From Botryllus schlosseri (taxonomy: Eukaryota), in assembly GCA_051294905.1 (NCBI GenBank), contig CM119384.1, positions 15,190,001 to 15,254,000 on the forward strand: 64,000 bases of DNA. The letters run 5' to 3'. The notes under the pieces are model-generated. The model worked only from the letters and a program-made list of their open reading frames with translations. It did not search any database and was not told the DNA's origin. The translations under genes were made by a program, and so were the position numbers. Positions within the stretch are counted from its first letter, which is position 1. Every line of letters starts with the position of its first letter. Below are positions 3,336 to 60,020 of this stretch, piece after piece.

Positions 3336-3779
3336 CTCCCATTCTGCGCCGCAAGCGCGGACGCGAAAGCCGCAGCGGCCGCGGCTTTTTCCGCCTTCCC
3401 CTTCGGTACCGAGTGCTTCTGCAGAGACCCGATAAAACGGGTTGATATCTTGATCGACCGCTTCACCGGCATGTCGCCTTCTTCGCTGACCAAGTCCTCC
3501 GCGCTGTCCTGTTGTTTCAAAAGCTCCGGAGACGACTCGCTGGCCGACACCGCGCACCTGCGCCTGCCCAGTCGCGCGGCAGGCGGCGGGTTCGAGTCTG
3601 TGCCTATGAAACTTTTCACGCGCCGCGCCGCCGATGTGCTGGCCACACGTTTCAGCACTTGGGGCGGTTTTGAGTCCTCGTGACTGGAATGGCTCCGCTG
3701 CAAAATCTGCCGGTATCGGGCATACTTCTCCAGGGACGGGTACCAGATGATCCTACTACTTCTCGTGTCCTCGCTGACA
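3336..3779 (-). CDS. 444-bp phase 2-2 cassette exon (VSEDTRSSRIIWYPSLEKY...AAAAAFASALAAQNGR)
   Basis: Acceptor gctacag| after a pyrimidine run, donor AG|GTAACG; frame open throughout (extends track ORF 3332..3703); 5' boundary less certain. Confidence 0.65.
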
Positions 3780-6700
3780 CTGTAGCGTAGTACGGTAATG
3801 CGCAGGGTTCCAAAGTAGCAAAATAAAGAGACACCGCGTTAGCGGGAGAAGATCCAAAAACGGCGACTCCCAACAACAACGCTAGCGACCTTAAAGCTCG
3901 TGAAAACGGCGCAGCGAATATACTCAATTAGTTTTTGCCGTTTCCGAACGAAAAACTAGCTCACATCACAAATACGCGTCTTTTGTGACGAACAAAAACC
4001 AGTCCCGACTGTACCGTCGCACACGCAAAACTATATTTGCGGACAGTAATCTTGCCGCGAGAACTCTTTTTATTCGATACGATTCATCGTTTACTGCCCG
4101 TCACGAATTCGTTAGGTTACAGAACGCGACCACCTGCTATGCCATGTCGTTTATAGGGGCGTGCACAATGATTCGGGTACTCTAATACGAATCAAGTATG
4201 CATTGTCATGATTCGAGTCGCGTAGTGGGAGTCTGTTTTCGAGTACTGACATTGTATGCCCCTTTCCACGAATAATTATATTCTTATTGTCGATGAGACT
4301 TATAGTCTTAATGCTTTTTTCCACCGTGGAATTCTTGAAACCTCGATTGGTCGCATCACAACATTAAAAATACCTAAACCTGGTGACTAGATTGTGATAT
4401 CAGTCCCGGTAATAAGATCGCTCTCTCTTCGATCACAGCTTTTCAAAAAGCCGATTCAGCACGCAGCATTCGTCAGATCAGCGATAAGATAACCGCAGGA
4501 CGCAAACTCCGTCGACTAATCGCTGCTACTAATTTGGCATTATCAATTATCTCGATTAAGCGTGACAGAGCAGGATACAAAAGTCAGCGTTTGCTATTAA
4601 CGCTTCTCAGAACACGACGTCGAGTATGCAAATTAGCTAGCAACCGACAGCAAATTAGCAGCTGCAACGGGGTCACCTCCTACCAAAACAGCCACAAACG
4701 AAATTTAACCAAAAGTAAGTCTCCAACATCTAGCTACACCATCGGATACCCGCAAATGAATGCAGAACAAAAAGTTAATGATTTCCGATCCGCGAAGTTA
4801 ATCCAAAACGCCATGCAATCATTATGCTCCATACGATAAGCGCATCAAACGTGTTATCACAAAATCGATCACCAACGATTCATATCGCCTTAAAACCGTG
4901 GTAATGCAATTGCAGGCAATAAATGACTGCAAATCTCGCATACTCAACATGGAATAATGGTCCATCTCCTCACAGCACCAACCAAATTATCAAAACGACT
5001 CCGCACCTTAATAAAATCCGCGTTTATGCAAATTACAATATAATGTTCCGAACGATTACACACGACCTACTAAGTTCTCGCCCGAAATTATCGACCGCCG
5101 GTGAAAATAACTTCTGGTCCTACTGCTCGCGCGTGCTCGGGTCAAGGAAATCACGTTTCATTTCCTGGTTTCACGCCAAAATAGTTACAACGATCAGTTT
5201 TCGGGAAGTATGGGGGCAGTAATGCATCCTCACCTGCCGGGTGAAAATAACAACTATGCGCTGATATTATCGACAAATGAATTATTAAAGTCCCCAGCAG
5301 TAGTATAGATATTAATTTGGTAATGATCGAAGCGTTCGCGGGCCACATATCACCGTCAACGGGCCCCACAGCAATAACAACACTATCGATTCAATTTTGC
5401 GTCACTCCATGTATAACGACATAAGTTAATATAAGACTCCGGATGCATCATTATGACATACATCTCTCAGTAGGTTTCCACTACACGCACGACGCTTTTT
5501 GCGACATAGCCAGCGTATAAATTAGATTTTCGGGCGTGCGATGCCAAATAATTGATTAATTATTCATTTCCGCGAGCACGCCCGAGCAAAAAAGTGGTAT
5601 ATTCACGACAATATTATATCCTGGTTGAGTAATGTTTGCCGATTCGAGCGCATCGGTAATAATGACATATTATCCAGGGAGAGGTATAGGCGACATATTC
5701 AATTGGCATTAGCACGTTCTGTTAACGCGGTAAACATTGAGAGCAAAGACAACAAAGAACTTGTACCAACAAATGATATTAAGGCAAACACTACAATAAG
5801 AATAAGCATATTTCTGGTCCTTGTGTCGAGATAATGAAATATGACATGCCGACTACACCCAACGGTCCAACGAGATACTAGGTTCAAATCGTCAATTTTC
5901 CAACATTACAGTCCAAAATAAAATCACATTCAGAAGTTGGTCTGATATATTCATGACGCCATAACAGTCCCACAAAGAAGTCATCGTTAAAATCCCGCAT
6001 TATTCAAAAAGTCCGGATTTCATAATCATAAACAACGGCACTACTATCGCAGCACCAACCTATTATACAAGCAAATTGAACTGGAAATTTGGTGGTATAG
6101 ATAAAATATATTTTCCTGACTCTCGGGCCCTGTCAGATATGGATAGAATATCGACACAGCAGCGAATTTTTGTTAACTAGCTGGGTATAGCGTGTCACTA
6201 CAATTCCTACTTTGAATTCGGAGTATGGAGACCCCAGATATTTTTGCTGATACCATGAGAACTTGAAACACTCATCGTACATAATCTGATATCTGCCATT
6301 GACGAGCGAGGTACCTTGCACTTAGAGCTAAAATTATCCACTTATCCACTCCAGATCGACATAATGCCCGCGTAACGCTTCTACGCAAAACACAACAAGC
6401 CTAAATATTGTAAACTCCATATCAACAAAAATTCCAACACCGCTGCTCCTCCCTTACGATAGCTGACCCATGTATGTATGTAGGAGTAGGTACAATGTAT
6501 AGAACACAACCTCGCACCAACGCGCTCCTTGGGCGGTTGCTAACTCCAGGCAGCTGCGGTGCGACAGAGATCTCCCATGAGGCGTACGTAAACAACCTAG
6601 GCTCGACGCGTAAATTTAAGCTAACACGACCATCGCGCCAAGACGTGAGCGCTGTTATCAAGACAAAAAGTTAATAGTTAACAGCTCAGTGTCGAATATC

Positions 6701-10194: not shown

Positions 10195-11008
10195 GTCATC
10201 GCAATTCCATCTGTACCTCCTATTCGTTATCGCCGGCAAGTAAGTTACGTCATCCTCGTCGGTGAGTCCAGTTGCAGAGGCCGGGCGTCGTTCAATTTCA
10301 CAATCCTCCATCGCAAAGTTCGTTAGCTACCAGACTCAATACTACAGTAGAGCACCTTGCTGAATGTTCAGAACAGAATGGCCACAGTAATATGAAGTCC
10401 GTCGATAACCTGCACTGACTTGCGACAACGCTATTTTCAAAGGCCGAAAGAAGTTCTACGCAATCGGCTTTCAAGACACACCAGTTAGCCCCCCGCCAGC
10501 CTCAGTTACACGAATAATTGCCTCATGATCCCCCAGACAAGTCTAGCGGTCGCGTAGCGCTCTTTTTCTCCCTGCAATCCGCGCTAAGTATTCTCCCAAT
10601 CGATGCATGTCAAATAGCCTATCAAAAATCCTTCTCGACTAATGCACCTGGCGTGTAGAGCGGGCAAAGAGGCCGGCTGACAAATACTCATGCGTAGTGC
10701 GGCGCGTGCAATACGCTCCGTGTTAAAGCGTAGAGGAAGTGTTGTCAAAGATAAACAGTTCCGTTTCATCGCAGAGGTAGGCGGGACTGCCACAAGAGTC
10801 ACGCTTGAATAATGATCCAACTCTCAACAGTCGGCACTTATCATACAATTGGTCGCTGGGCCAATAATAATTATTGACTATTCGCGTCGATACAAAGACC
10901 CTAACCGCCGATACAATATCCATAAAGGTGCAGCCTAATTCAAACCCACGGCGCTGCCAACATGTCACACACTCACGACCACAGGGGTGCCTTTATTTTG
11001 TACATGCA

Positions 11009-11655
11009 AGCTAATGAAAAGCTAATGCAGCTAATGAAAAGCTAATGCAGCTAATTAAGCTAATGAAAAGCTAATTAAGCTAATGAAAAGCTAATGAAAA
11101 GCTAATTAAGCTAATGAAAAGCTAATTAAGCTAATGAAAAAGTAAGCTATTGAAAAGTAAGCTAATGAAAAGCTAACTAAGCTAATGAAAAGCTAATTCA
11201 GCTAATGAAAAGCTAATTCAGCTAATGAAAAGCTAATTAAGCTAATGAAAAGCTAATGAAAAGCTAATTAAGCTAATGAAAAGCTAATTAAGCTAATGAA
11301 AAGCTAATTAAGCTAATGAAAAAGTAAGCTATTGAAAAGTAAGCTAATGAAAAGCTAATTCAGCTAATGAAAAGCTAATTCGGCTAATGAAAAGCTAATT
11401 AAGCTAATGAAAAGCTAATTAAGATAATGAAAAGCTAATTAAGCTAATTAAAAGCTAATTAAGCTAATGAAAAGCTAATTAAGCTAATGAAAAGCTAATT
11501 AAGATAATGAAAAGCTAATTAGGCTAATTAAAAGCTAATTAAGCTAATGAAAAAGTAAGCTAATGAAAAGTAAGCTAATGAAAAGCTAATGAAGCTAATG
11601 GAAAGCTAATGAAAAGAACGCTAATGAAAAGCTAATGAAGCTAAAAGCTAATGAC
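11009..11655 (+). repeat. tandem array in the left arm (GCTAATGAAAA / GCTAATTAA units)
   Basis: Directly visible; variant CTATTG recurs at a 182-bp spacing. Confidence 0.97.
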
Positions 11656-13212: not shown

Positions 13213-13901
13213 CTAGCTTTTAGCTTCATTAGCTTTTCATTAGCGTACTTTTCATTAGCTTACTTTTTCATTAGCTTACTTTTCATTAGCTTACTTTTTC
13301 ATTAGCCTAATTAGCTTTTCATTAGCTTAATAGCTTTTCATTAGCTTTTCATTAGCTTAATTAGCTTTTCATTAGCTTAATTAGCTTTTCATTAGCTTAG
13401 TTAGCTTTTCATTAGCTTACTTTTCAATAGCTTACTTTTTCATTAGCTTAATTAGCTTTTCATTAGCTTAATTAGCTTTTCATTAGCTTAATTAGCTTTT
13501 CATTAGCTTTTCATTAGCTTAATTAGCTTTTCATTAGCTTAATTAGCTTTTCATTAGCTTAGTTAGCTTTTCATTAGCTTACTTTTCATTAGCTTACTTT
13601 TTCATTAGCCTAATTAGCTTTTCATTAGCTTAATAGCTTTTCATTAGCTTTTCATTAGCTTAATTAGCTTTTCATTAGCTTAATTAGCTTTTCATTAGCT
13701 TAGTTAGCTTTTCATTAGCTTACTTTTCAATAGCTTACTTTTTCATTAGCTTAATTAGCTTTTCATTAGCTTAATTAGCTTTTCATTAGCTTAATTAGCT
13801 TTTCATTAGCTTTTCATTAGCTTAATTAGCTTTTCATTAGCTTAATTAGCTTTTCATTAGCTTAATTAGCTTTTCATTAGCTGAATTAGCTGCATTAGCT
13901 T
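13213..13901 (-). repeat. tandem array in the right arm (reverse complement of the left array)
   Basis: Directly visible; variant markers CAATAG and CCTAA recur at a 303-bp spacing. Confidence 0.97.
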
Positions 13902-14850
13902 GCATGTACAAAATAAAGGCACCCCGACCACAGTCGGTCACGAACTAAGCAGGATTCGATTTATAGCAGGATCTACATCGCGCAATAGATTTAACGAACC
14001 TAATGGCATATGACGTCAGATCACGTTATATATACATTAAGCCATACTGTGTTGTTCCCCCGTTATGCCAATGCAGGTAGGTGGCAAATATTCAGCAAAC
14101 TACCACGCCCCGTAATCGACATCATCACAGCACGGGATATCCGTAAGATATAATCGATTCCAGCCTCTCCGACCAGGCGATGTAATCAATTTTAACCACA
14201 TTAACAGACTAAAAATAATTTACTGAGTCGTTAAAATCTCATGCAGTCGTTCCTGTACAGCTGGCAACGTTTCTCAAATCCATTTCATCAATTTTCATGA
14301 TCCCAACCGAGTAGCTAGGGTTACTATTTTCGCGCGCCGCAATGACACGCGCCACACAAACGAAAATTGTTGTTGGGATACTTTCCAGTCACTGAGGGAA
14401 CCTTGAAACCCAGACACGAGATAGTATTGCATTCAATACATGCAACAGATGGTTTCCCGCGCGCCCACGCTGAAATATTATAGTATCAAACGACCTGTAG
14501 CATAATCTCAAATCGAAACGACGTATTACTGTCAGCTAACCTGAGATAATTGATATAAATGAGTCATGTAACTGGCATTATTTACTTCACAGTAGCATAA
14601 TAAGTTATTGGACACTTTATCATGTTATTTATTACTTTATATGATTTATTACTTTATTATTTTTATTTGGACACTGCAAGTCCTTATTACTGTTATGACG
14701 TCATAATGAGTGCTAGTGCTACTACAATACTCGTCTAGGAATCGAATCGATTTTGCCCACTCCTAAACCAATTATATTCGCCAACTACAGAACGCACCGG
14801 GCGCAATGACACCATTACAGACAATCCCATCTTACGAATATAACACCAAC

Positions 14851-15152
14851 CTTGCAACGGACGACAATCTCTCTAAAATCACCCCCTCTTCGATAACAAC
14901 CGAGTTCGTTGCTTTCAAATTGGAACTATTCCTTTTTCCGGCCTTACGCCGACGCAGTGAAGGAGACAGGGCCGACCACCAGGGCGACCCCTTCAAATTC
15001 ACTTCAGAGTCCATCAGTTGAGGCATGCTCTTAGGCCGTTGCTTCTTGCTGCCTTTGCGAGTTCGTAACACATTCGGTTCTTCATATTTGACTCGCCTGA
15101 TCACTGCCGAATTCCCGTTTCTTCTCAGCCGTATTCCCACAACTGTATCCAT
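14851..15152 (-). CDS. alternative first exon (MDTVVGIRLRR...KQRPKSMPQL...LSSVAR)
   Basis: ATG 15152; two candidate phase-2 donors, AG|GTTGGT (exon end 14851) and TC|GTAAGA (exon end 14836). Confidence 0.8.
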
Positions 15153-16575
15153 CCGAGCTGTATGTATCGCTCTATCTCAAATTTACACAACTATACAAGC
15201 AATCCTAACCTTATCGCTAATAGCAATCCTACACACGCAAGAACAGTTCGTTAAATACCGCGTATCTGTCAGGTCGTGACCGAGTTCTCAACGATAGCTT
15301 TCTTTCGCCACCCTCATGACTTCGGTATGACTTCCCAATTCGACGCGAATCATATATTCAGTGCAAAAAAAACTACTAGTCATCACTTCGCGCTTGACGT
15401 GTGCAGTACGCAACATCGGTGTGACATTTCACAACTGTCCTTACAAGCCGAAGCCTGCGAATAGGCGACATTCGAAAATAGCACGCCACTGTCAAACATC
15501 TAGGTATTAAATCGATGTGTCAATTTGCCTTCACCGCCGGTATGAGCGCTTTACATAGACGTGCAGTTGTTTCACAACCAATTCCCCAGCCGTAACTGAA
15601 CTCGCACACCGAAGCGAGCCTTTCTTTGTTTGCTTTGAATGAAAACACATGTCCGACCTTAAACTGTTATTAGCGCCCGTCTAATTCCGCTGCAGGGCCG
15701 CTAGTCAATAAACTACAACTCTACAAGTGAACGCACGTAATTTCTCCCGACTCTGTAAGCTAAAATCGCGCGGTTTTTCGCTCTAAATACTTCGCATACG
15801 ATCATTTCGTATTAGATTAGATGGGCGTCGAATAATCGCCAAGCTAGGGTCAGACAGCGTTTCCGCGTATCAAACCGCGCTTCCTGGAATGCTGAAAACG
15901 TTGCGAAGATGCACAAGCGGTGTGTCGCATCGACACGGTTTTGCCTTTTTGCCTGATTTCAATGCGTTTACAAAAATTAATGTACAATTGTACATTATAC
16001 AATGTGCCGTGTCACGCTTACTATACAATAATACATATGCATAACTTGTTCTACCATTACGTACGCCAACGTAAGTTTACCTATTGAGCTACGGCGTTTT
16101 CTGATGATAACTGCCGAATTATAAAAGTGTGACGTAACAGGCAGTGTCCTGTAAGTTATCTTCTACCAGTCTGCCGCATCGTAGGCCTAACCAAGGAGCA
16201 AGATACCAACACCATCTTCTACTTTGATATCTTCTGGTGCATCGTACGAGTACCAAATGGGGCATTGTCTCATAATTACTCAAAACTACAATTATATTTG
16301 TCTCTCACCAACTAAATAACCTTAACGCGTCCAAAACAACAGAACACCTGAACATTGAACAACCACGGCCTAGGAAAATGGCATAACACCGTAATAGCCG
16401 CGCCGACACACCGAATAACACCGAATTCATCCTACAACGTTAAACTAATACAATTCATCCACAGTTTTCACACACGTAATTGTAAAACGATCATGGCCGC
16501 GCGCAGATAATAAGCGGCGATCGCGCGCAAATTATACACCTTTCTAAAAACCGAAGGCATTTAGGTTTCACTCAC

Positions 16576-16608
16576 CGACTTGTTTTCAGTGTCAGCGCCT
16601 GATCGCAC
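16576..16608 (-). CDS. 33-bp micro-exon of the LIM domain (CDQALTLKTS)
   Basis: Acceptor ttttcctcttattttcag|, donor CG|GTGAGT, phase 2-2; supplies the second Cys of C-K-K-C. Confidence 0.88.
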
Positions 16609-18754
16609 CTGAAAATAAGAGGAAAAATTGAATACTTCAAAAAAACGCCCCATTATACGAGCGGCATAATAATCGCGTCGTAATCGTCTCGGCGATAATT
16701 CGAAAACCGCAACCGCGAAACCGGCAATTTTACGTAATACGTTATACTTCTTACATTCCGAAACTCTTCATCGCAACGTATAACATCCAATGCCACGGTC
16801 AGAGACACTACGGAAATAATAAGCTGCTTAAACAGTAGCACATCATTAATGTTGTTTTGATGAATGGGGCGGTGCAACTTAACAACCGTCAGCACTGCAC
16901 GTTTTCATCATCACTAAACCGTATGACACCATCATGAAATCAGACTTCAACTCTTAAAGTAGATTGACGAAAATAGTCTTCAGAATAATGTATAATGGTC
17001 ATTCATGCATATACTGCGCGTGGATTGTAGTGCCATTTCCGCGGTACCGCGAAACTTTTGAACAAATTGGTCCAATGGTCTATGTCTGTACTGTACACGT
17101 CAGGATATCGGCGTCAATGCATTATACAATTTCACTGGGAGGGATTTAAACTTGATACGCCATGGCTAGTTCTGCGACCAAACAACGCCTGTATATATAC
17201 ATCGATTGGAACGTTTTAATCAGAGTCAATTCATCAACGAGAATTATAGTTTCGATACGATTTTCCACTGTGGAAGCCTTAAAACCTCGATTATATCGCA
17301 ACATACGAAACACCTACTACAAACCTACGCAATTTACCGGAAATTACATGTCCGTGGAAACGTAGCATTATCACAAAGTGCAATGAAATGGGTACGATCG
17401 AAAAAAATTATCAAATAATCCTTGATGTGATGTATAACCGACATTATATTCTTTGTGTTCGAGTAACAAGTACATATTTAAACTCCACATGTTCAATATT
17501 GGCTACTGTCGGGGCCTACGATATCGTTGGCCCCGCTACTGTTATAACGTAAATGTGTGATACTCAAACATTCGACTCGGGGCCTAGTATACGATATTGC
17601 CCACTGCCCTTCCAGTGCCCAGCCTGCTACTGAGGTCGCCAAAAGCGTATTCACTACCATCCCTGTATCCATTCCTGCATCCAACTTCCCAACTACGTCT
17701 CAAACAGCGTCTCGCCAAAAACTACAGGACTGCCTAATGGATATCGTCTACCCTGTCTCGAAACGAAAAAAAACTCCGAAATTCGATTGAAAGAATGACA
17801 TGAGCGCTATTGATTTAGCGGTTTCATTTCGAGAAATCGTGTCGTATTGGCCGCGCGAGTTCTAAATACAAGCCTGGCCCGTCATTAGAAATCTATCACC
17901 GACGCTTCCGAAAATATACAGGTATGACATTTTTCAGGGCGTTTAATTGCATGACATCGCTATTGTCGTAACAAGTTTGTAACACAGGTTAATCCCCATC
18001 CATTCGAACAATAACTTAACGTCGCTGATTTGAATTCGGTAAAATTTGAAATCGCTATTCAAGCTTGCCAGCATACAAATCCGCGCCAACACAATATCGG
18101 GCTGTGTGCAAAATCATCACTCATTTGATCGAAAGCTAAAACAAGCCGTTTCCACTTTCAATCGACATTTAAATTGACCGGCTCGCTTCTGTGAATTGCC
18201 TAGTTATTCCCGATTTTCGGGAACGCTTGACGCAGATATTGTAGGCTACCTATAAGGCAATGTCATATTCTCCAAATTCACAAGAGACGAGGCAACAATC
18301 TATTTTTGAGCAATGGATCACCAGAGCGATCACAAGTGACGATAGCTGGAATAAGCTAGATCCGAATGGAGATACAAATCCATACCATGCCAGAGTCCCA
18401 CAACCACCTATAATATACCTAGCCCATTTACCAGTAATTATCTGGTGTATCTTGACAAAGCGTGTACAAATCTAACTCGGTATACACATTACACACAAAA
18501 ATAAGTGTTCAAGAACACGGTATCGATGAGAAACACAACACAACAAAATGCATGGGCAAATCAGTGACGAACAACAAGTAGCAGAGAAAAGATTCAGTAT
18601 ATAACATAAGTATTACAGTAACAATAAAACTTCAAGCACGCAAATAAACACAGCACGCTGTGTCACTTGTACGCATCCGTGAACGATCCAACGAATCACC
18701 CTAACCCGAGCTCGTTGAGATAACAAGCACATCATAATCGTGTCGCTGGCTTAC

Positions 18755-18825
18755 CTTTCATGTCGCACCCGAAATTTCTTGTGTCGCGTAACGTACGGCG
18801 AGCGCAATTGCTCCAGCCATTTCAT
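18755..18825 (-). CDS. alternative first exon (MKWLEQLRSPYVTRHKKFRVRHER)
   Basis: ATG 18825, 23 codons + AG, donor AG|GTAAGC (phase 2). Confidence 0.7.
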
Positions 18826-21216
18826 TTCTGGCATAGCTCAGTATTTCAATAAATAACGGCAATAAATAATAGTACGGCCTCGATAAACAGCTATGGAGAA
18901 AACAAGTTTTGATTGAATACGTCTCGTTAAGTAATAATAATAACTGAACTGCCTATATACCGCTGCAGTGAACAGCAACACACGCTAGTTTTCATAAACG
19001 CCGCACAATAGGATTGCAGTGCAAGCCGGCTTCCGGAGCACGCCCAGACTGTTATTTCCTAAGCACTAACGCCTATCGACAAATATCAGGTGCCCAATGC
19101 AATGAAGTATCTACCATGTATTTGTTACGCATAACTCGGATCACTTATATTCAAAAGTCATACTACAGCACATCTTGATTTGGAGCTTATCCGCGAGGTG
19201 GCGCTTGATCGCGATTGTTGACATGGGATGCGTAATTGCGTAGTCAGGCACTACGTACATCACGGTCCTGTACGTTACAGGGGCGCGTCTTTCAAATATT
19301 TTCAACTGGCCAGTGAAATCAATTAACTAACATAGTAAAACACTGCCTTTCTTCAGCACAGGAATAGCTTCAGAAATCGTGCACTTTATCGTAAACCTCA
19401 CCAGCCCACAATGAATTTGAACGCTATTGTAATATGTATTGGTGCGTGTGGAAAACAAAACAAAAACTCTTTACATTGGCAACTTCCGTGGCTCGATGGC
19501 TAAATATGTAACAATGTCGACTCGAGTAACTGTAAATCAGTTCAGTTCAACGGGCATGAATAGGGGCATCAACAAGTTCTCAAAATACACTTCGTTAACT
19601 GTTAGCGCAACGCGAATATCAGTCCGCGAAAAGACATTTCTTTGGAGTAATGATCAAATAGCGGCGCTTTCACAGGGCGTTATGTCATATTTATGGTAGA
19701 CTCGTAAGAGATTATTTTCGATTACTTTTGACCGGCAATATTTTATTTGCGATCGGTATCAAAGTGTCTATTTCATCTGTTCAAATTTTTCCCCGTGGAT
19801 ATAACGTAATAATGAACGATACTTGAAACCTCGACTCAACCTTACTATATTCGAAATCGAATCAACCGGGACACTCGACTTTGTTCAGCATTATCTCCAG
19901 CAATTTTTAAAGCTATAATGGGAAAAATCTTAGCTGTGAATTACAAGTACACACTATACCTACAGCACTGAAATGCCTGACCTACACTCTATATACAGCT
20001 GACTATAACTTTAAAAGTTCGCCTTAGCTAGCATCTAAAAAAGCAACACTGCCTGCAACCCATTAAAAACATTGACTGGGATGTAACTTTCAGTAGCTTC
20101 GTGATACCTTACTAGTTGTACAACAAAGCCTCATCACGCGCTAGAACATATCTGGACAACGTCAGGAGGTCTGACGTAAACCATATTGCAACGATCGTAT
20201 GGCATTCCCGCACGTGAATTGATACCAGAGCAGGCGAATAGATCCATGCAAATTTGGCGACGACCCAAAAAAATCGAACGCCAACCAGCCTTTAAACCTG
20301 GCACTAGCGGCGTCATACGTACGGACTCCTCAATTATATCCATCCCCATTGTGCTTGCAACGTTTGACGTCTTTCCGCGTTAGCGCAGTAACGCAATTGA
20401 GCGGTGAGCGCGAGAAAACACTTTTGCGAGCGTATGATTGGGACTTAGTCACAGTTGTAGTGGCGACTCAAGAGGCCATACCTCCGTAACGACCCTCAGC
20501 TGTCAGCGATACGCTCTCTCGCGGTGATAATGGCCGCCGTATATTGAAATCCGGGCGCGGTTTGGTATAAATATTACATTTCAATGAGCGTATGTTCGCA
20601 CACAAACATGTTGTCGGAAATATATGTTGCTTTTGCGCTTGGCGTAGCGTGAATTTCAGACACACGAATATGATCCAGCGGATTTGATTGTGAATCCCGT
20701 AAAACCGGGGAGCTTTCAAAGCAAAGAGCCGGTATGGTTGAATCGTAGAACTGCAATTCGCTGTTCTCGAATGGCGCTGTTTCCTATTAAAGCAGCGCGC
20801 AATTTGACTTTCGCGAGGCTAAAACAGTAGATAATTCAAACGAGAGAACTCACTCATTCATACCACACGGAACAGATCACGGAATGCCACATTATGCAAA
20901 ACACAACAAGGATAAAACCGCAGTTTATGTAAACTTTATCTATCCAGAATTTAAATCGGCAATAATCCGAGCCTGCTCTAAATTCACAGCGCGATTTGAA
21001 ACGCGCAAGTGCAGAAAAACGGTGGCTGTTATTAACATATTTCCAGCCCTGGGTTTTGTACACTTGTTATAAGGTTCCATGAAAGGCCAATATTGAAACT
21101 ACAACTACAAAACCACAATAGTCCTTTATAACATATATCCTTATTTTGCCTCAGTTACAGCGATGGCTACAATCCCAGGTCGCAAGCGAAAGTGATGGCA
21201 ATTTTCTAATCATTAC

Positions 21217-24500: not shown

Positions 24501-25300
24501 TGTAGTTTTGACAGGTCTCAGAAATCGCTACTTCTACTTGGTAACTGAGGAAATATTTATGTCGGTATGTCTGCCCAAGTAGCAACCCCGACTCCTTTGA
24601 CCAGCTCATGTACCAGGTAGGGGGTGGGCGATACGAAAACAGCTGATTCGAATAATTCGAGGCCGCGCGAGTTCGAATCAGGAATTTCATTTCGAGTCCG
24701 GTTTTCAAACATCGAACGAGCTGCTAAAATCTTATTGCGGGTACTTTTTCTTCCTTGCCACTTTATGTTCGTGACGGGAGGCAGTTAAAACAAATACACG
24801 AAACGACAACCATCATTCGCATTCCAACATAAGGATAGCTGACAACACAATATTAGGCAGTGCGGTGCAAGGCTGAGTGATAAGCTGTCGCAACATTTTC
24901 GAGTCATCAGTTGGTGGGGAACAAAAGGATTCGTTCCGTTGTTGAACAAAAGGATTCGTTACGTTGTCGTAACGTCATAAAGTCAAAACAAACGAAGGGA
25001 GGACGGGAAGTTCTTTTCCTAGATTATTCTTCGGGGGAGGAGGACCGTCTCCCAACCAGAGATGATAACAAACGAAGTACTTCTACTTCAACTAGGCCCA
25101 GAACACTAAAAACTTTTACTTATTTGAACAGGTACTTACTACCTCTACTTGTTCTAAGGTATCGAGGTTGCTTGAATTTCTACTTGAGAACCAACGATGA
25201 CTACTTCAACTACGCTCCCTACACAAATTATTCAAGTGTTCTCGTTAACCAAAGCGGAAGCAGCCCAAGCAATTCCGCCGTAAAATCGCACGCATCTTAC

Positions 25301-25431
25301 CGAGAAATAGCCTCGAAAATGCTATCCTTACGCAGCGCGTACCTGCGCGACTGGTCCGCCACAAGCCTGTCCTTTGTCACCGAAAATCTTCGATACAGAT
25401 CCGCGCTTTTCGTGGGAGTCGACTTCCTCAT
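25301..25431 (-). CDS. alternative first exon (MRKSTPTKSADLYRRFSVTKDRLVADQSRRYALRKDSIFEAISR)
   Basis: ATG 25431 after an in-frame TAG, 43 codons + CG, donor CG|GTAAGA (phase 2); absent from the ORF track. Confidence 0.75.
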
Positions 25432-27613
25432 ACTTCCTTCGAACTATTCCGCCTCGCTACAGCAAGCCAGCGACAAGCAGAATGACAATACCAACTCTAC
25501 CGCGGCTCGAGAACCATTTACTGCGCGGCGATGCTTAATCGCCTCATTAAAGTGTCGCGCGTCGCTTGCAAACGGATGAAACACGCATATTTGCCAGTGG
25601 ATTTCGAGGGATAATCCTGCCTGATTGATGATATTTAGAGAACGAAATGTCAGAGCAGCGCTGCCGCTAGGAGAAACGCGACGCTAAGCTTGGTTCCGGA
25701 GCGATATCAATAACACACAGACCGCGTAAGTGTTATAAAAGGAATTCGGAGCGGTCCGCAATAACCCGATAATGCTATACACCTGTTTCGACATCTTGCA
25801 ACAATATACTCAGATTACCAAATTTATTCCGCCTATTCTTGCAACAATACAACGCGATTTTAGCTATACAAACCTTTCTACTAAATAATCTGATATAATC
25901 TCGACCCTTTTAGCAACGGCACGGTGCACCACTCTGATTAAATCAGCGTCTTAACATGATTGCTTTAACAAGTGCGACCTACAAATGTCAAGTGGGCCAT
26001 GGTTACACTAATCACAATTATAGCGTAATGATTGTATTCAGCGCGAAATCACGGCTTCGGGTTTCAATGCAATGATTGACAGGTCGCGGTTTCGAATCCG
26101 TATGCTCGCGTCGAATGACGTCATCAAAGCTAGCGGTATATATAGCGTATGCACGAGAAACGTATCGGATTCAATGCGTATTGGCGTTTCGCGATTTTCG
26201 CAAATATCTCGCGTTTCTATGTATTTTCACAACATCGATACTAATTCTCCCCGCGTATGCGCGTTGCGGTTACTGTCCGCTTGTCGCGGTGGCCATTGGC
26301 CGTTAGTTCAAACTATTTGAGAGTACGGACTGCCAGGCGGTACCCGCAGTTTACCAGCTACTAGCTAGGAAGCCAATTCAAATTAGCGCGATGTCAGGAA
26401 GGCGGGCCATATTTGCAGGCTTGGCGTATAGTTTGGAATGCACAAATGTCAACGAGAGGAGTGCATCGCTGATACCGAGTGCTCGTGCGCTGCTCTGACA
26501 ATGTAAATTATCCCCTCGTTGCCGAAAATAATTGCCGAATAGTTGGACATGTGCTTGTTTACGAAGGCTACGCAGAGCGTCATTCATAATTTATTATATT
26601 AAATGCGCACCCGTTTTCATTATCAGAATATGAAATGCTCGGCTTGTTAGGAACGTAAATTCGTTTTTGAGGCAGGCGTGCGTTTTTGGTAACACAAAAT
26701 CCAGGCGGCTTGTCCAAAACATTCAGTAAAACCGGCAAGAAGTGTTTTTCGAGATGCGAAATAATCGGACACTCGGGACAGCTCTTACCCGCAGTTACAC
26801 AGTTGTATACCACAGACATTGCAAACAAATTTACGAAAATAGAACAATCAACAACGGCAGGATACAAGAGACTACGGACCGAGATGATTTCCTTGTACTG
26901 TTAACCGTAACTCCGTAATGTACCTCATTTTCCCACAGTCCATTTTACCTCTATTATGCAGTAATAAGTAACACCGGATTTCTCTACTTCATTTCAATTG
27001 ACGATGTTTTAACTTGCTGAGTAACAGACGGATGAAATAAACAGGGCTGTATCTGCTCAACTCTTCCCAGTACGGTATAGAAATTTTGGCCCTCTTCGTA
27101 TCAAGCGCAGCTTTTGTTTCAGCGCTCTTTAGGAAACTCCTAAAACCATAGACGTGATTGCTACACCAAATACGTCACACCAAGGTCATGAACTCCCCTT
27201 ACCCAATATCAAAACTGTGACGTAATATAAAAACAATTGCCTCGTGACGGTGAGCTAACCGCAAAACTGACACACACGAGATTCATTCATTAGCAGCTAC
27301 GGTTTTGTGACGTAAACTATTCGAAACCATACCATATTCAACAACGGCTGAAATTCTACGGCAATTAATGTCAGGAAGAAGCCGGCGTATTGTTACGCCT
27401 GGTCATCGGCCTATACAACGAAATCTACACAAGTTTCCCTTTTATACAGTACTCAAGTCAAACGTAAGATGGCACCTGACGAAATTAAAACCCCTTAAAA
27501 GCCCTACCGCACATGTCGACGGATACACTAATTCAGTCCAATCCCGCGATATCCAGTGACGCATAATCGCCTGGTACAGTTCCACCAGACAGAATGGTAT
27601 GACAAGCGCTTAC

Positions 27614-27652
27614 CGTCTCCTCAAATCAAATCTCTTGTACGACACGACCTCT
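27614..27652 (-). CDS. candidate 39-bp cassette exon (EVVSYKRFDLRR)
   Basis: Acceptor tattactgcag|, donor CG|GTAAGC, phase 2-2, open frame. Confidence 0.4.
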
Positions 27653-32226: not shown

Positions 32227-32990
32227 CGCGCGTTTAAATCCCCGCCTTTCGAACCGCTCTTCCTACTCCATGGAAACAACGGCAGCGTCCAAGACGACGC
32301 GGACCTTTTCTTCGTGGACCCGCGCTTTTTGGGCCTTCCTTCCTCCGCCCGCTGTTCCTCCACCAGATCCGGAGTCGATCTCTTAAACAGGCTCAGGGAC
32401 GACGACGCGTCACGCTTGATCGAGAACACCGCGGGCATAGAACGCCGCCTGCCGGAAGGTCTCTCCACAGACAGCCTACCGGGCTCAATCCCGTCGTCCC
32501 GGCTTCGGCTTAAAGCAGCCCCGTCCACGTCCTCGATTACAAACTGCAGACAGCGTTGTTTGTCCATTTTTAGCGGCTTAGGCTTCGTGTCGTTAAGGGG
32601 CACGCGCGTAGGCTTGCTACGACGGCCCGAGTCTTCGTCAGGCACGTAAAACGTCACGTCTGTGGAAGACCCCGATTGTCTCTTGCTTCTGCTTTTGTTG
32701 CGTATGCGCAACGCTTTCGGTAGATTTTCAGACGACTTCGGACGCGGCCTGTCCGATCTAATTGCGGGCGGAGAAGGCAATCGGCCGCGCTGGTCTTTTA
32801 CGGCAGCGCAAATATTGACGTTAAGCGCCGAGACGCACCGTCTCTCTTCGTTGAGAGCTTCGCAACAGCTGTCTTCGTCCGACACCCGAGAACTGATGGA
32901 ATTCGCCCGCTTGCGTCGGTTCCCCACAAACTTTTGGTAGCATCCCACGTCCGGAGAGCTCGGGACTCTTTCGCCTACGCGGCCAGCCAT
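32227..32990 (-). CDS. large alternative first exon (254 aa, basic/Ser-rich, probably disordered)
   Basis: ORF from ATG 32990 ends at donor CG|GTGAGT (phase 2); GC-rich coding-like patch. Confidence 0.85.
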
Positions 32991-45327: not shown

Positions 45328-45435
45328 TTTTTGCATTTGAAGCACTCCCTGTGGTAGTGGGATCCCTTGAAAGATACGTGTTCGCCTCCCATGTTAACGG
45401 GGAATCCACAGCCGTCGCAGTTTCTTCGTGAATCC
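45328..45435 (-). CDS. LIM domain exon 1 (finger 1 C-x2-C-x18-H-x2-C plus first Cys of finger 2)
   Basis: Acceptor ttctttgcgtttcag|, donor AA|GTAAGT, 108 bp, phase 2-2; encodes DSRRNCDGCGFPVNMGGEHVSFKGSHYHRECFKCK. Confidence 0.92.
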
Positions 45436-48400
45436 CTGAAACGCAAAGAACAACAGTCATCGTCCGGAATCGAAATTATTGCAAGACGTTCCGGACTTTG
45501 AAGACATAGGGCGATACCAGGGCAGCCGGCTGTTATCGCATTGTCAACCACTGGTTTGAGAAACGGATTTGGAAATTCAAACAAAATTTCGATATTGTGG
45601 CCGGATATGAATCGGGTTCGGATTTAAGAGTTTCCTCAAAACCGGATTTGAAGTTAAAATCCGAAAAATACGACTGGAAACGGCAGGTGGTACGATTATT
45701 CTGTCATCGTCATCATTAATCATCACGACGCAACAGCACTGGTCTGCCTGTTGACGAATACCTCATCAACGCTGTCCGGCTATTGACCGATATTTCCGGT
45801 ACGCAATAATGACCGCACAATCACGTTGAGTCACAATCACGTTGAGTCACGTCGTCAGCATGATAGGTCGTAGACTCGGTTCTACTTTTTCGGAGTGCTC
45901 GTGTGTTTATGATCTTCAGACTACTTCTACTTGACAGATATTCCAGCATTAATTCGCTCTAAGAATGGTGCATTGGGTTGTGTACTGCGTACGGGTATGT
46001 TCCTGCCCATTTACGAAAACTATAGGTTGTTAAAGGTTTGGTTTGCGACAAGATTAAGGTTAGATAGCGTATAATATTGTAGGTGATAACCCTAAAGCGG
46101 CATCATCAATGATCACTGATAGGAAACGAAATGACACATTACCCATTGACCACTTACAATTTACTAGAGTAGAGTTTGTAAAACGATATTTTCCGCGTCG
46201 GCCATGAAGGTCGTCTACTGCGCGGCAGTAAATCCGTTTCCGTGTTATTTCGTCGAAACTTCCTTTGCCCTAGCATGTTCGTACCGACAATCGCTTCACG
46301 CTATCTCTAGGTAAATATCTAGCTGTATATCAACAACATGCAGGTGAAAGGCCAAGATAGAGAGACAGCTACGTGGTCAAACTTTAGTAGAGCATCGGTG
46401 AAATTCAACTATACAAGTATATATCACTGTCCAACACTATGCTGCTATATACAAAACGCAAAAATGAGTCTAATCATGTCCAACGGACCCCGTACTTCCC
46501 TAAAACACTCAACGGACACTGAACAAAGTGCTACCATCCGCTCGCCCAGGACCATTGTGACACCATCAATGCCTGCATATTAGCAATACATGAGTAACGA
46601 GGCGGTAGAATTGATTCGCCATCTCATCAATTTGTACATAACTATAATTAGAACAGATCATTTTCGGAATAGCAATTGCAAATATGACTAACCCGGGAAG
46701 TGGGGAAAAAGCACTTCAACTCGCAAGGTATGCATATTGCATATATTACCTAGTACATGTTGAACTGTCTTGACAGTGTCTTCAGATACGCTGAGCATAC
46801 CAGTTTAAAGCCAGATATAGAGATAGTTTTATGACAGGCGAAATCCCTTGCGTGACCCAGGAAACTGGCAAGAAATGTCAATCGAAAGGCGTGCTACCGC
46901 TCCACGGCTATGGCATGACCCAAGGCATCGGTCAGCGATTACTAACTAACGGCATTCGGAACCAGCGTCGGCTCAGCGCATGTCTTCAATCTTCCTGTGT
47001 AGCCACCGTTTTGGCAACATTATTTAATCACACAAGTTTTGTCTTGTAACACACGCGATACTGTAATGAATTCGAAACTTGATTTTGTAAATGACCCGTA
47101 CGCTCGCAATCAACACGCAATCAATCAACTTTTACCGCGCCATCTTACTAAGTGACCAATAGCCAGCCTAATCGTGCTTGTCGAATGAAGACTAGCGCAA
47201 ATTGCAATTACAAGGTCATAATTATCAAACTCTGCCGGCTTAATATCCCCACACAGTGCACAGTACCACCCGCACTAGGCCACCCAACTTATAAAAGTAA
47301 CAACAGTTTCCCAAAGCTCCCACCCTAACCGCCAAGGCAGAACTCATTGAACAAGAAGCGCGTAAACTTTGTTTGGAAAATAACATACATTGGCAAAGGA
47401 AAACTGTCGCTCCTTCTGTGGCAAGCGTAGTCTGTGACGTCACAATGTCAAATTTTCGAACAATGGGTCGGTGCTTAACAGAAGTTGGACTTGTTAAGAC
47501 ATGCCGCAGTGGTGTTTCGTAAACAAGACACTGGGTATGTAAATGACACAACGCCTGATCGGACATAGGTATTTTACGGGCTGTACTGCACGGTTTGTCG
47601 AAATATGCATTTTCAAAGTATTATGGTATCGAATTACATATCCTCCACATCGATTACGCGATGACATATACATTACATAATAGTAATGCTATCGAATATC
47701 AAGCAGGGCGATACCACAATTCAGGCGGTCGGCCAAAATTAAGCGCGGTACGGTGTACTACTGTACAACATTACAGAAGCGCTCTTCCTTCATTATATAT
47801 ACTTCGACTGAGTGTATATTGCACATCTACGTACGTACAATATTATGCACTTGTGTTCCAAACACGTTCGAGTCGTTGAAAATGGTCACAGGCTTGTACT
47901 GCATGATTCGCGCTTCAGGGTTTTGACTATCAACATCAAAATCGCACTGTGCAAGTGTGCAAGTAGCTTTTTGTCCTAGTGCAAGTTATCAACGAATGGT
48001 GCGCCTTAAGAATCAAATCAAATCCATGTAATGGCAATTTCCAATACAATACAATCGATATGATGGCTTTGTGATTTCGTTATCAGGAAGGCATCAAGGC
48101 CTTGTGGGGCTAGATGAAACAATCGTTATGCGACTAAGCGTTTTCGCATAACATTGTAAAAACCGAGTGTAAGATATCATGCCACAAACATATATGTAAG
48201 TTGTGCAGAACGAAACATCTCGAAGTGCGTATATGTGGGCACTTATTAACCAATAACCAGCTACGTTGTTGTTGTTTGTGGTGTTTGTCGACCGCTGTGG
48301 TCATTGGTCATTTACACCAGGCCAATTTTCTTATTCATTCCGTAGCTGCCGACATGTAGCACGGCCCACTTCATAGGCTTTTACAGGACACCGCTTACAC

Positions 48401-58571: not shown

Positions 58572-58640
58572 GAATATTTTCGGCTGACGAGTACTGTCGA
58601 TTAGCTCTGACGAGTGTCAGCCGGGTTTATTTCAATATGC
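58572..58640 (+). mobile_element. rearranged copy of the hammerhead repeat
   Basis: CTGACGAGTGTCAGCC-GGGTTTATTTCAATATG lacks GAAAATATTC, which appears inverted just upstream. Confidence 0.6.
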
Positions 58641-59216
58641 ATAGATATGATTCAATGAGATATAGCCTACATCACTATCAGAAACGGGCACGCAATGAAG
58701 AGACATGTTACAGCACTACTGGGTCCAGGCGAATTTGGTGTGGCGAATTAGGTCAATAATCTCATTACAAACGCTGGTATAGTCATCTGGTAGACACTCG
58801 GTATATTTATTTTAGACACACGCATCAAACATGCGCATAAAGACTACCCGTGTCACAGATGTAAAAGACTGGACCACAAATAAAAACCTTCACGTTATTT
58901 ATCAGGATAAGTTTACTAGACCACGACCTGACATAGCGATCTCGCCTTCCGACACATGCCACTTTTTTGTCACCTGTTCTTTTATATTATCTTCGTTTAC
59001 TTTTCATTGAGTGTGCATGTGCATTGTGCATATGCCTCCTTTTTTATATCGCCTAGGCCAGGTGGGCGTCTGATTTCGAAGACTACTCCAAGTCGTTTCG
59101 ACTCCTTCCTATCTTTCATTGTATCGCAGTCATGTGGTGTATTGAAATGATGAAATTTTAGCAATATATTGAATAAAATTTAATATGGCTTGCTCAATGT
59201 CCATTATCCTATGGCT

Positions 59217-59565
59217 CAGGTGTCACCAACCTTTTTGAAACCAAGAGCTACTTCTTGGGTACCCCTACCAAGAACAGAAAACTCTTATTCACCGGGTCTC
59301 ACACCAGCGTCTCCGGGCTCAGTTGCGTTGCCGCACTGCGCGCCGAAGCGTCAATCTTCGAGTCGAGACTCGGGAATGCTAACTAGATTCCCGTTAGGCC
59401 TCCGCGTGGGCGAAGACCAGCAACGCTCCGATCGACTGACCCATGCAAGAACAGTATGGTTCAACTGCTGCTAATACTAAATCCGCTTTGCTACTGCGAC
59501 CGCGGATACTCATTTGGTCCTCGCGCGTTACCAGTAGCCCGCAGGCACCGCGTTGGTGACCCCTG
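59217..59565. mobile_element. hAT MITE whose interior is a 28S rRNA fragment
   Basis: CAGGTGTCACCAAC...GTTGGTGACCCCTG termini; TSD CTATGGCT/CTATAGCT (7/8). Confidence 0.85.
59262..59495 (-). pseudogene. degraded 28S (LSU) rRNA fragment
   Basis: The plus strand matches remembered antisense 28S blocks: ACCAAGAAnAGAnAACTCTT, CGTCTCCGGGnTCnGTTGCGTTGCCGCACT, TCGGGAATGnTAACnnGATTCCC, GATCGACTGACCCATG, GTTCAACTGCTG, TTTGCTACT. Confidence 0.8.
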
Positions 59566-59883
59566 CTATAGCTCAAAAGTCCCCGCGATGGTTCATAAAA
59601 AATACACATTGACTCGGACAAGCTGTATGTTTACGTCATGGACTATAATACGCGGTGGTACCAGTGAACGAATAAGTGTACGAGGCAGAAGTGCATCGTT
59701 CATCCTCACGACACCCATTATCATCTATTCATGCTACCGCCTGCTAACTTTATACCGAAAACGATTGTCAATACAATATATCACCTCTCATTTCCTGTAA
59801 ACTACACATGAACTCCGATTTAACCCGGCATGGCAAAAACAGTCGGAGAAAATGACATCACGGAATACATAACATCCACTCAC

Positions 59884-60020
59884 CGGGCTATGCCGGAGCC
59901 GGACGCCGCGTTGTTCGGTTTGGAGTCCGTTATCTTGCCGAATTTCTTCCGGATGCTCGACCGCGCCGAAAACTTCTTCGGTGACGCAGCCGCTTTCTCT
60001 CTGTATACCGGCGAAGGCAT
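59884..60020 (-). CDS. first coding exon of the LIM-containing isoform (MPSPVYREKAAASPKKFSARSSIRKKFGKITDSKPNNAASGSGIAR)
   Basis: ATG at 60020, 45 open codons + CG, donor CG|GTGAGT (phase 2), matching the phase-2 acceptor at 45435. Confidence 0.8.

What the first reader, a model, noticed from the sequence alone, without database searches (positions are those of the whole stretch)
3336..60020. Array of phase-matched alternative first exons that swap out the LIM domain
Seen: ATG-led exons at 60020, 32990, 25431, 18825 and 15152, plus cassette-like exons at 27652 and 3779, all end in phase-2 donors that split an Arg codon. All fit the phase-2 acceptors at 45435, 16608 or 2355. Only the most distal promoter can give an intact LIM; the others sit inside the LIM introns and replace finger 1 with unrelated basic N-termini of 24-254 aa. 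Inference: promoter choice acts as a switch of targeting modules on a common GoLoco/GAP core. Three of these first exons are too short for the ORF track.
Basis: partly seen in the sequence, partly recalled or inferred. Interest (0 to 1): 0.7.

Follow-up and report, generated by a model that had tools for sequence, protein, structure and literature searches.

The report
Alternative start exons of Rap1GAP gene
This sea-squirt Rap1GAP gene carries several conserved alternative start exons inside and just ahead of its LIM-domain exons, so the same Rap-inactivating enzyme can be made with or without a working LIM domain; the main LIM-less form is already annotated in related species.

Summary
The window holds the 5' half of a minus-strand ascidian Rap1GAP gene (LIM + GoLoco + RapGAP; closest annotated relative Styela clava LOC120327908). 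The LIM domain is split into three exons (45435-45328, 16608-16576, 2355-2268), and all junctions are in phase 2.

- **32990-32227:** a conserved first exon. It is spliced to LIM exon 2 in annotated LIM-less isoforms of Styela, Clavelina and Ciona.
- **3779-3336:** a conserved cassette, annotated in Ciona between LIM exons 2 and 3.
- **18834/18825-18755 and 15152-14851:** ATG-led coding exons. They are conserved in the same order, with phase-2 donors, in a distant relative's contig. For 15152, 7 of 8 population differences are synonymous.

The exon at 60020 is real but internal. Homologous coding exons lie upstream, out to about 83 kb in window numbering. Exons 27652 and 25431 have no support.

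So the most distal promoter is not the only one that can yield a LIM.

RNA reads were too sparse to show junctions. The idea is right in outline and wrong in several details. It is a new member of a known kind. The scan noted a similar hidden start exon in another gene of this genome (s1-262591).

The parts
62073..62259 (-). Upstream internal coding exon of the long LIM-bearing isoform (phase-1 acceptor, phase-2 donor AA|GTAAGA)
   Evidence: tblastn to Styela clava isoform X1 residues 353-416. Boundaries read.
59884..60057 (-). Most likely an internal exon with a phase-2 acceptor (tatcag|A) at 60057 and donor CG|GTGAGT.
   Evidence: SPKKFSARSSIRKKFGK matches S. clava X1 residues 423-449 (blastp 1e-8) and Ciona. 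The frame is open upstream of the ATG, and the acceptor phase fits the donor at 62073.
46158..46276 (-). It joins LIM exon 1 to give a short basic head plus an intact LIM.
   Evidence: Homologue about 1.1 kb upstream of LIM exon 1 in relative contig L015 (tblastn 2e-8). ATG, in-frame upstream stop and phase-2 donor (AC|GTGAGT) are all conserved. 12 synonymous-only codons.
45328..45435 (-). LIM exon 1 (zinc finger 1 plus the first Cys of finger 2); phase 2 at both ends
   Evidence: Pfam LIM 23.4 bits. 71% identical to L015 2454-2546 and 74% to S. clava.
32227..32990 (-). Alternative first coding exon (254 codons + 2 nt, donor CG|GTGAGT). It joins LIM exon 2 to give the LIM-less isoform.
   Evidence: Homologues in four other species, all ending at a phase-2 consensus donor. 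Joined to CDQALTLKTSR in S. clava X7-X9, Clavelina X5/X6 and Ciona X4/X5. Single copy in the genome.
27614..27652 (-). Claimed 39-nt cassette. Unverified, probably a chance match.
   Evidence: Phase-2 acceptor and donor are present. No homologue in L015 or in annotated isoforms. Similarity to the 18834 exon gives p about 0.04 after matching for basic content.
25301..25431 (-). Claimed ATG-led exon (donor at 25343 or 25301). Unverified, probably a chance match.
   Evidence: Phase-2 donors are present. No homologue found. No exact ORF on record. Unique DNA. Motif similarity is not significant.
18755..18834 (-). Conserved ATG-led exon (MPEMKWLEQLRSPYVTRHKKFRVRHE + AG|GTAAGC). It joins LIM exon 2.
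   Evidence: L015 16338-16414: MPEIKWLETLRSPHVGRHKKFKLQE + AG|GTGAGG, about 0.9 kb upstream of its LIM exon 2 (tblastn 1.9e-10). An in-frame 3-nt length difference and 7 synonymous-only codons. No RNA coverage in the four runs laid.
16576..16608 (-). LIM exon 2 (33 nt, CDQALTLKTSR), the common phase-2 acceptor for upstream 5' exons
   Evidence: Conserved in L015 17290-17322 and in all orthologous isoforms. In transcript contig L018 it follows yet another 5' exon.
14851..15152 (-). Conserved ATG-led coding exon (100 codons + 2 nt, donor AG|GTTGGT). It joins the 3779 cassette or LIM exon 3.
   Evidence: Homologue in L015 at 18734-19084, downstream of its LIM exon 2 (4e-8). P0152 is 95% identical and diverges right after the donor. 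All 8 differences in X1 contig 3 lie in the ORF and 7 are synonymous third-position changes. Two X23 RNA reads lie on the expected strand. Single copy.
3336..3779 (-). Cassette exon (444 nt, phase 2 at both ends) inserted between LIM exons 2 and 3
   Evidence: blastp 1e-18 to the insert in Ciona XP_026689749/52/56/59, which lies exactly between ...LTLKTAR and KESDGG.... Also matches P0024, a transcript-derived protein, z = 7.8.
2268..2355 (-). LIM exon 3 (last CxxC of finger 2); phase-2 acceptor, phase-0 donor
1655..1693 (-). First half of the GoLoco motif (GHDDLFAMLEKAQ), a 39-nt phase-0 exon. The second half (GTRLDEQR) lies just below the window.
   Evidence: The orthologous exon is skipped in S. 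clava X3/X8 and Clavelina X3/X6.

Best explanation
The window carries the 5' half of a single-copy ascidian Rap1GAP orthologue. Its protein is a long disordered N-terminus, one LIM domain, a GoLoco motif, the Rap-GAP dimerisation and catalytic domains, and a C-terminal tail.

**Layout.** The LIM domain is cut by two very long phase-2 introns of 28.7 kb and 14.2 kb. Just ahead of LIM exon 1 and inside these introns sit conserved ATG-led exons that also end in phase 2:

- 46276-46158, ahead of LIM exon 1.
- 32990-32227 and 18834-18755, in LIM intron 1.
- 15152-14851, in LIM intron 2.
- A phase-2/phase-2 cassette at 3779-3336.

**Mechanism.** A transcript that begins at one of these exons splices in frame to the next downstream acceptor (LIM exon 1, LIM exon 2, the cassette or LIM exon 3).

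**Products.**

- Starts upstream of LIM exon 1 keep all eight zinc ligands. These are the long form from about 83 kb, a form from about 66.6 kb, and the short form from 46276.
- Starts at 32990 or 18834 lose finger 1 and one ligand of finger 2.
- A start at 15152 keeps only the last CxxC.
- The cassette pulls finger 2 apart.
- All forms keep the RapGAP engine.

**Shown.** The exon anatomy, their conservation and coding-type evolution, and, in three other ascidians, the 32990-type to LIM-exon-2 join and the cassette.

**Inferred.**

- The 46276, 18834 and 15152 exons are spliced as drawn in this species.
- Separate promoters drive them.
- The basic, Ser-rich heads (RRRSMP, RRFS-like sites) change localisation or kinase/14-3-3 control of Rap1 inactivation, as N-terminal variants do in vertebrate Rap1GAP and Rap1GAP2. 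This last point rests on my own knowledge.

The exon at 60020 is an internal exon of the long form. Exons 27652 and 25431 are probably chance matches.
For: **Gene identity.**

- Rap_GAP Pfam hits on downstream exons: 57.5 and 69.7 bits.
- GoLoco sequence read.
- tblastn of the S. clava isoforms lays 20 collinear exons from +83142 to -12476 in window numbering.

**32990 exon.**

- The profile search finds S. clava XP_039250211 (1045 aa) with the exon at residues 2-284, followed by CDQALTLKTSRRDTEGG.
- The same architecture is seen in Clavelina X5/X6 and Ciona X4/X5.
- Pfam finds a LIM in S. clava X1 and none in X7.
- The ORF ends at a phase-2 GT[AG]AGT in four species.

**Collinear conservation in the 20-kb relative contig L015.**

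| Element | E-value |
|---|---|
| 46276 homologue | 2e-8 |
| LIM exon 1 | 1e-13 |
| 32990 homologue | 1.5e-24 |
| 18834 homologue | 4e-8 |
| LIM exon 2 | 3e-4 |
| 15152 homologue | 2e-6 |

- No other place matched below 1e-3 among 542 translated pieces.
- ATG, upstream in-frame stops and phase-2 donors are conserved.

**Coding-type change.**

- Synonymous-only codons number 7 and 12 in the two short exons, against 9 in LIM exon 1.
- 7 of 8 population differences in the 15152 ORF are synonymous third-position changes, binomial p about 0.003.

**Cassette.** Ciona isoforms carry the homologous insert between LIM exons 2 and 3.

**Open frames and LIM pattern.** All proposed joins are open. The LIM zinc pattern is present only when the three LIM exons are contiguous.

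**LIM exon 2 as a shared acceptor.** Transcript contig L018, from a Styela-like species, shows a further short 5' exon spliced to LIM exon 2.
Against: - No junction read or transcription start was seen in this species. On 14050-19950 the bulk RNA run gave only about two reads on the 15152 exon and none on 18834. The contig runs look like unspliced pre-mRNA or DNA.
- The 46276, 18834 and 15152 heads are absent from the nine S. clava, seven Clavelina and five Ciona isoforms that I could fetch.
- The 15152 donor is weak (GTTGGT), and its counterpart in L015 would be a GC donor.
- P0152 (95% identical) and P0001 (62% identical to the 32990 exon) come from the same run. That run may be a mixture, so P0152 may be only a population variant.
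- Function of the heads is pure inference. Pfam finds nothing in them.
Confidence: 0.8

Rival explanations
1. The conserved ATG-led exons are real 5' ends, but they are made by spliced-leader trans-splicing or alternative acceptor use on one long primary transcript. Ascidians trans-splice many mRNAs (my own knowledge). On this reading there is no promoter in front of each exon, and the switch is a splicing choice rather than a promoter choice.
For: - An acceptor-like block (GACAG|GTG), about 60 nt upstream of the 32990 ATG, is conserved between the window and L006.
- The contig runs show unspliced coverage across the introns, so long primary transcripts may exist.
- L018 begins with GAATAA, which resembles the end of the Ciona leader as I recall it. 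This is weak.
Against:
- No leader-bearing read was seen.
- Annotated orthologous isoforms are compatible with either mechanism.
Confidence: 0.25
2. Only the annotated forms are real: the long LIM form, the 32990-type LIM-less form and the cassette. The short intronic ORFs (46276, 18834, 15152, 25431, 27652) are then chance ORFs or conserved non-coding elements that happen to be open.
For: - The ATG + phase-2 donor criterion is only mildly enriched, with 16 against 10 donors.
- No RNA support in this species.
- The short heads are absent from annotated isoforms of three ascidians.
- 25431 and 27652 have no homologue, and their shared motif is not significant.
Against: For 46276, 18834 and 15152:

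- Protein-level conservation at 32-71% identity, where the flanking intron is unalignable.
- Conserved ATG, conserved donor phase and an in-frame length change.
- An excess of synonymous change.

Non-coding elements would not show these features.
Confidence: 0.1
3. The intronic ORFs encode separate small proteins from nested genes on the same strand and are not spliced into Rap1GAP.
For: Each starts with an ATG after an in-frame stop, and each ORF stops within a few codons of the proposed donor.
Against: - For the 32990 type, annotated mRNAs in three species continue into LIM exon 2.
- In every species the ORF end coincides with a consensus donor in phase 2, and the 'stop' lies inside or just after GT[AG]AGT.
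- Nested genes would not need a conserved phase.
Confidence: 0.04

Closest known systems
NCBI-annotated isoforms of the orthologous genes: Styela clava LOC120327908 (X1-X9), Ciona intestinalis LOC100183188, Clavelina lepadiformis LOC143449350
   Same: - Same gene and same LIM + GoLoco + Rap-GAP_dimer + Rap_GAP architecture.
- A 32990-type first exon is joined to LIM exon 2 to give LIM-less proteins.
- Ciona carries the 3779-type cassette between LIM exons 2 and 3.
- There is an alternative first exon of the 66.6-kb type.
   Different: - None of the fetched isoforms starts with a 46276-, 18834- or 15152-type head.
- These are automatic predictions. I found no paper that describes them: no paper in the library holds Rap1GAP, LIM domain and GoLoco together.
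Vertebrate RAP1GAP / Rap1GAPII and RAP1GAP2 a/b/c N-terminal variants (own knowledge)
   Same: - Same protein family, about 50% identical in the core.
- Alternative 5' exons give different N-termini on one catalytic core.
- The GoLoco region is present in only some forms.
- The N-terminal heads carry kinase and 14-3-3 sites.
   Different: - Vertebrate proteins listed have no LIM domain (Pfam column).
- Here the alternative starts sit inside a folded domain and abolish it.
LIM + GoLoco + RapGAP proteins of other invertebrates (chiton Liolophura sinensis isoform X3, annelid Owenia fusiformis)
   Same: Same four-domain architecture by precomputed Pfam, so the LIM fusion predates the tunicates.
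   Different: Their exon structure and isoform sets were not examined. The alternative heads show no detectable similarity to them.
LIMK2a / LIMK2b / testis LIMK2 (own knowledge)
   Same: Alternative first exons that truncate or remove LIM domains while keeping the catalytic part.
   Different: An unrelated enzyme (a kinase) with two LIM domains. It is an analogy of design only.

Membership tests
Rap1GAP family (Rap-specific GTPase-activating proteins) | Rap_GAP catalytic domain (PF02145) | tested here: met
   Two downstream exons of this genome score 57.5 and 69.7 bits against a cut-off of 27. They are 66-92% identical to S. clava exons.
Rap1GAP family (Rap-specific GTPase-activating proteins) | Rap-GAP dimerisation domain (PF21022) N-terminal to the catalytic domain | tested here: inconclusive
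   A single exon piece scores 17.5 bits, below the cut-off of 27. The full orthologue scores 98.8 bits. Homologous exons are present.
Rap1GAP family (Rap-specific GTPase-activating proteins) | GoLoco motif upstream of the GAP domain | tested here: met
   DDLFAMLEKAQ | GTRLDEQR, read across two exons. Pfam GoLoco scores 32.3 bits in the S. clava orthologue with near-identical sequence. It was not scored on the spliced product of this genome.
Rap1GAP family (Rap-specific GTPase-activating proteins) | GAP activity on Rap1 (catalytic Asn 'thumb') | not tested
   No residue-level or biochemical check was made.
LIM domain (PF00412) | Eight zinc ligands spaced CX2CX16-23HX2CX2CX2CX16-21CX2(C/H/D) | tested here: met
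   The pattern is found only when exons 45435, 16608 and 2355 are joined. Exon 1 alone passes Pfam at 23.4 against 22.9 bits.
LIM domain (PF00412) | LIM retained in products of the intronic start exons | tested here: not met
   Joined products of 32990, 18834 and 15152, and those with the 3779 cassette, lack the pattern. S. clava X7 has no Pfam LIM. This is the point of the finding.
Alternative first coding exons | ATG-led ORF after an in-frame stop, conserved between species as coding sequence | tested here: met
   Met for 46276, 32990, 18834 and 15152. Not met for 25431 and 27652. 60020 fails because homologous coding exons lie upstream.
Alternative first coding exons | Transcripts that join the exon to the shared downstream exons | tested here: inconclusive
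   Met in orthologues for the 32990 type and the cassette.
Alternative first coding exons | Own transcription start (promoter) at each exon | not testable with these tools
   No CAGE or 5'-end data. The read tool found no places where molecules begin (table 6).

The most novel reading that the evidence does not exclude
The two giant phase-2 introns of the LIM domain form an old docking platform, shared at least among stolidobranch ascidians and for the 32990 type across tunicates. At least four conserved start modules and one cassette decide whether Rap1GAP has a whole, half or broken LIM domain. Three of these modules (46276, 18834, 15152) are unannotated anywhere. This lineage may have added two more (25431, 27652). 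Each head would then direct Rap1 shut-off to a different place or kinase input.
Probability: 0.3. Interest if true: 0.5.

Novelty: new member of a known kind. Interest (0 to 1): 0.35.

Why it matters
Rap1GAP controls Rap1, a switch for cell adhesion and polarity. Ascidians and some lophotrochozoans keep a LIM-bearing form that vertebrates lack.

The work shows that the LIM domain is optional by design. It also maps three conserved, unannotated start exons. That gives annotators concrete exons to add, and it gives experimenters defined isoforms to tag or knock out. They can then ask what the LIM domain does for a RapGAP.

It is a clear example, but not a new principle. Alternative first exons are common, and the main LIM-less form is already in public annotation.

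Tried and rejected
1. **RNA evidence.**
   - The look-up of sequencing runs gave 14 probable RNA contig runs and 4 raw-read RNA runs.
   - The single read-laying run, on 14050-19950, showed almost nothing apart from an expressed repeat at 17.2-17.6 kb.
   - The 33-nt LIM exon 2 is too short for reads to be placed, so no junctions were seen.
   - I chose that stretch because it held two claimed start exons and the shared acceptor. With hindsight, 1-6000 or 44.9-46.4 kb might have told more.

2. **Shared motif.** [YHFW][KR][KR]F.[VLI] occurs only in exons 27652, 25431 and 18825 across all six frames, and it looked like proof of common descent.
   - There is no DNA similarity between them.
   - Against composition-matched background, the similarity to the verified 18834 exon gives p = 0.35 and 0.04.
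   - I dropped it as evidence.

3. **P0024 head.** My impression that the N-terminus of P0024 resembles the 15152 exon failed an alignment test, z = -0.8.

4. **Exact look-ups.** The 32990 and 25431 ORFs are not on record.

5. **L018 5' exon.** It has no homologue in the window.

6. **Domain searches on the heads.**
   - Pfam finds nothing in any of the alternative heads.
   - A PDB sequence search finds nothing for the 66.6-kb start exon.

8. **Repeats.** The 25431 and 27652 regions are unique DNA, not repeats.

9. **Literature.** No paper links Rap1GAP with a LIM domain.
Full report
**What the locus is.**

- The window is G000:C14:15190001-15254000, from a 495-Mb assembly.
Joined, these spell a complete LIM domain, and every junction is in phase 2.
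- LIM exon 1 alone passes Pfam's LIM threshold.
- Downstream I found the GoLoco motif split over two exons (DDLFAMLEKAQ | GTRLDEQR). Further down are RapGAP exons that score 57.5 and 69.7 bits on Pfam Rap_GAP.
- The gene is therefore a Rap1GAP with an N-terminal LIM domain.

**Which organism and which relatives.**

- A profile of the long intronic ORF found Styela clava XP_039250211, so the organism is an ascidian.
- A search with the S. clava core listed LIM + GoLoco + RapGAP proteins in several groups:
  - the ascidians Styela, Ciona, Phallusia and Clavelina;
  - a chiton and an annelid.
- The vertebrate proteins in that list have no LIM.
- Cluster look-ups gave nine S. clava, seven Clavelina and several Ciona isoforms.
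- tblastn of these on 164 kb around the window lays out the gene from +83142 to -12476 in window numbering.

**The 32990 exon.**

- The 255-codon ORF is far longer than chance allows in this window.
- It has homologues of 56-63% identity in two Logan contigs and more distant ones in two others.
- In all four species for which I could read DNA, the ORF stops inside a consensus donor in phase 2:
  - window CG|GTGAGT
  - L006 CA|GTGAGT
  - L015 GA|GTAAGT
  - L017 AC|GTGAGT
- The split codon is not always Arg, so the phase is what is kept.
- In S. clava X7-X9, Clavelina X5/X6 and Ciona X4/X5 this head is followed directly by the LIM exon 2 peptide (C-D-x-x-L-x-L-K-T-x-R) and then LIM exon 3.
- Pfam finds no LIM in S. 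clava X7 but does in X1.

**The 3779 cassette.**

- Its C-terminal half matches a 159-residue insert in four Ciona proteins (DMPVKRSIKISTRFIGSLQKHS...AEKAAAAAA; blastp 1e-18).
- The insert lies exactly between LIM exons 2 and 3, in both LIM-bearing and LIM-less forms.
- A transcript-derived protein from a more distant tunicate-like organism (P0024) has the same cassette directly before LIM exon 3, with no LIM exons 1 or 2.
- The cassette separates the two halves of zinc finger 2.

**The 60020 exon.**

- Its core, SPKKFSARSSIRKKFGK, matches residues 423-449 of S. clava X1 and the same internal place in Ciona.
- Homologous coding exons lie upstream at these places:
  - 62259-62073, inside the window
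  - 65.7 kb
  - 69.9 kb
  - 72.6 kb
  - 83.1 kb
- The frame stays open upstream of the ATG.
- A good acceptor at 60057 (tatcag|A) is in the phase needed by the donor at 62073.
- It is an internal exon, not the distal promoter's first exon.

**The relative's contig.**

- One distant homologue of the 32990 exon sits on a 20-kb Logan contig, L015.
- I translated its plus strand into 542 pieces and compared them with the window. Only six places matched below 1e-3. All were on the minus strand and in the same order:
  1. a new ATG-led exon (window 46276)
  2. LIM exon 1
  3. the 32990 exon
  4. the 18834 exon
  5. LIM exon 2
  6. the 15152 exon
- For 18834, the two species read MPEMKWLEQLRSPYVTRHKKFRVRHE and MPEIKWLETLRSPHVGRHKKFKLQE. 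Both are followed by AG|GT. They differ by an in-frame one-codon length change and have seven synonymous-only codons.
- For 46276, both species have an ATG shortly after an in-frame stop, the block RRPSWP.RKIS and a phase-2 donor. Twelve codons are synonymous-only, a pattern like that of LIM exon 1 itself.
- It would give a 39-residue head on an intact LIM.

**The 15152 exon.**

- It has the L015 homologue and a 95% identical ORF, P0152. P0152 is identical over 70 residues and diverges two codons past the AG|GTTGGT site at 14851.
- In the read-laying output, contig 3 of run X1 (14856-15213) differs from the window at eight places. All eight lie in the ORF, and seven are third-position synonymous changes. 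The neighbouring intron contigs carry similar numbers of changes plus indels.
- Two synonymous changes lie beyond the GTAAGG at 14947. The exon therefore runs on to 14851, which is also the phase-2 site.
- Two reads of the bulk RNA run lie on this exon on the strand expected for a minus-strand RNA. That is weak support.

**The two unsupported exons.**

- 27652 and 25431 have proper splice signals and open joins.
- They have no homologue in L015 or in any fetched isoform and no record in the protein collection.
- They lie in unique DNA.
- A motif that they share with 18834 looked striking but is not significant against composition-matched background.
- I put each at about 0.2 of being real.

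**Limits.**

- The only read-laying run gave no junctions. Splicing of 46276, 18834 and 15152 in this species is therefore inferred from conserved phase and position.
- Whether the 5' ends come from separate promoters or from trans-splicing is open.
- P0152 and the 62% identical P0001 come from one run, which I cannot explain other than by a mixed sample.
- The function of the heads is inference.

**Verdict.**

- The interpretation, alternative phase-matched 5' exons that remove the LIM domain, is right for the gene.
- It is wrong about the distal start, about exclusivity of the LIM-bearing promoter, and probably about two exons.
- The principle is ordinary, and the main isoform is already annotated in relatives.
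- The three conserved short start exons appear to be new annotations.

Noticed in passing
L007:2000-2653 (window numbering 66000-66653, about 2 kb beyond the window's end), minus strand: A 218-codon ATG-led exon ends GG|GTAAAT in phase 2 and joins the SDLLRRLSPDRRRS exon. It is homologous to the N-termini of S. clava X6, Clavelina X4 and Ciona X3. Pfam and PDB sequence searches give no ORF1p match.
   Followed up: partly
window 1655-1693 (-) and orthologues: The first half of the GoLoco motif is a separate 39-nt phase-0 exon. It is skipped in S. clava X3/X8 and Clavelina X3/X6. S. clava X9 and the Ciona forms without a Pfam GoLoco (X2, X5) lack both halves. The GoLoco motif is therefore itself optional.
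   Followed up: partly
window 17202-17595: A short stretch in LIM intron 1 has very high depth in all four runs, up to about 1000 in X1. Reads fit only in part, and there are many internal joints. It is a member of a high-copy, expressed repeat family.
   Followed up: no
window 11008-11654 and 13220-13891: Two tandem arrays of a roughly 20-nt unit (AAGCTAATGAAAAGCTAATT) lie in inverted orientation. They flank a 1.6-kb core with minus-strand ORFs of 118 and 110 aa. This is possibly a mobile element with repetitive inverted ends.
   Followed up: no
window 24911-25579 (+): A 222-codon TTG-led ORF lies on the plus strand, antisense to the claimed 25431 exon. It is low-complexity in appearance and lies in unique DNA.
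   Followed up: no
Logan run SRR25569784 (P0001, P0152): The same run yields a 62% identical homologue of the 32990 exon and a 95% identical homologue of the 15152 exon. Both have a single place in this genome. The run may hold two ascidian species.
   Followed up: partly
L018:1-120: A transcript contig of a Styela-like species carries a further short 5' exon (MPQPTVIDDK-M) spliced to LIM exon 2. It has no detectable counterpart in the window.
   Followed up: partly
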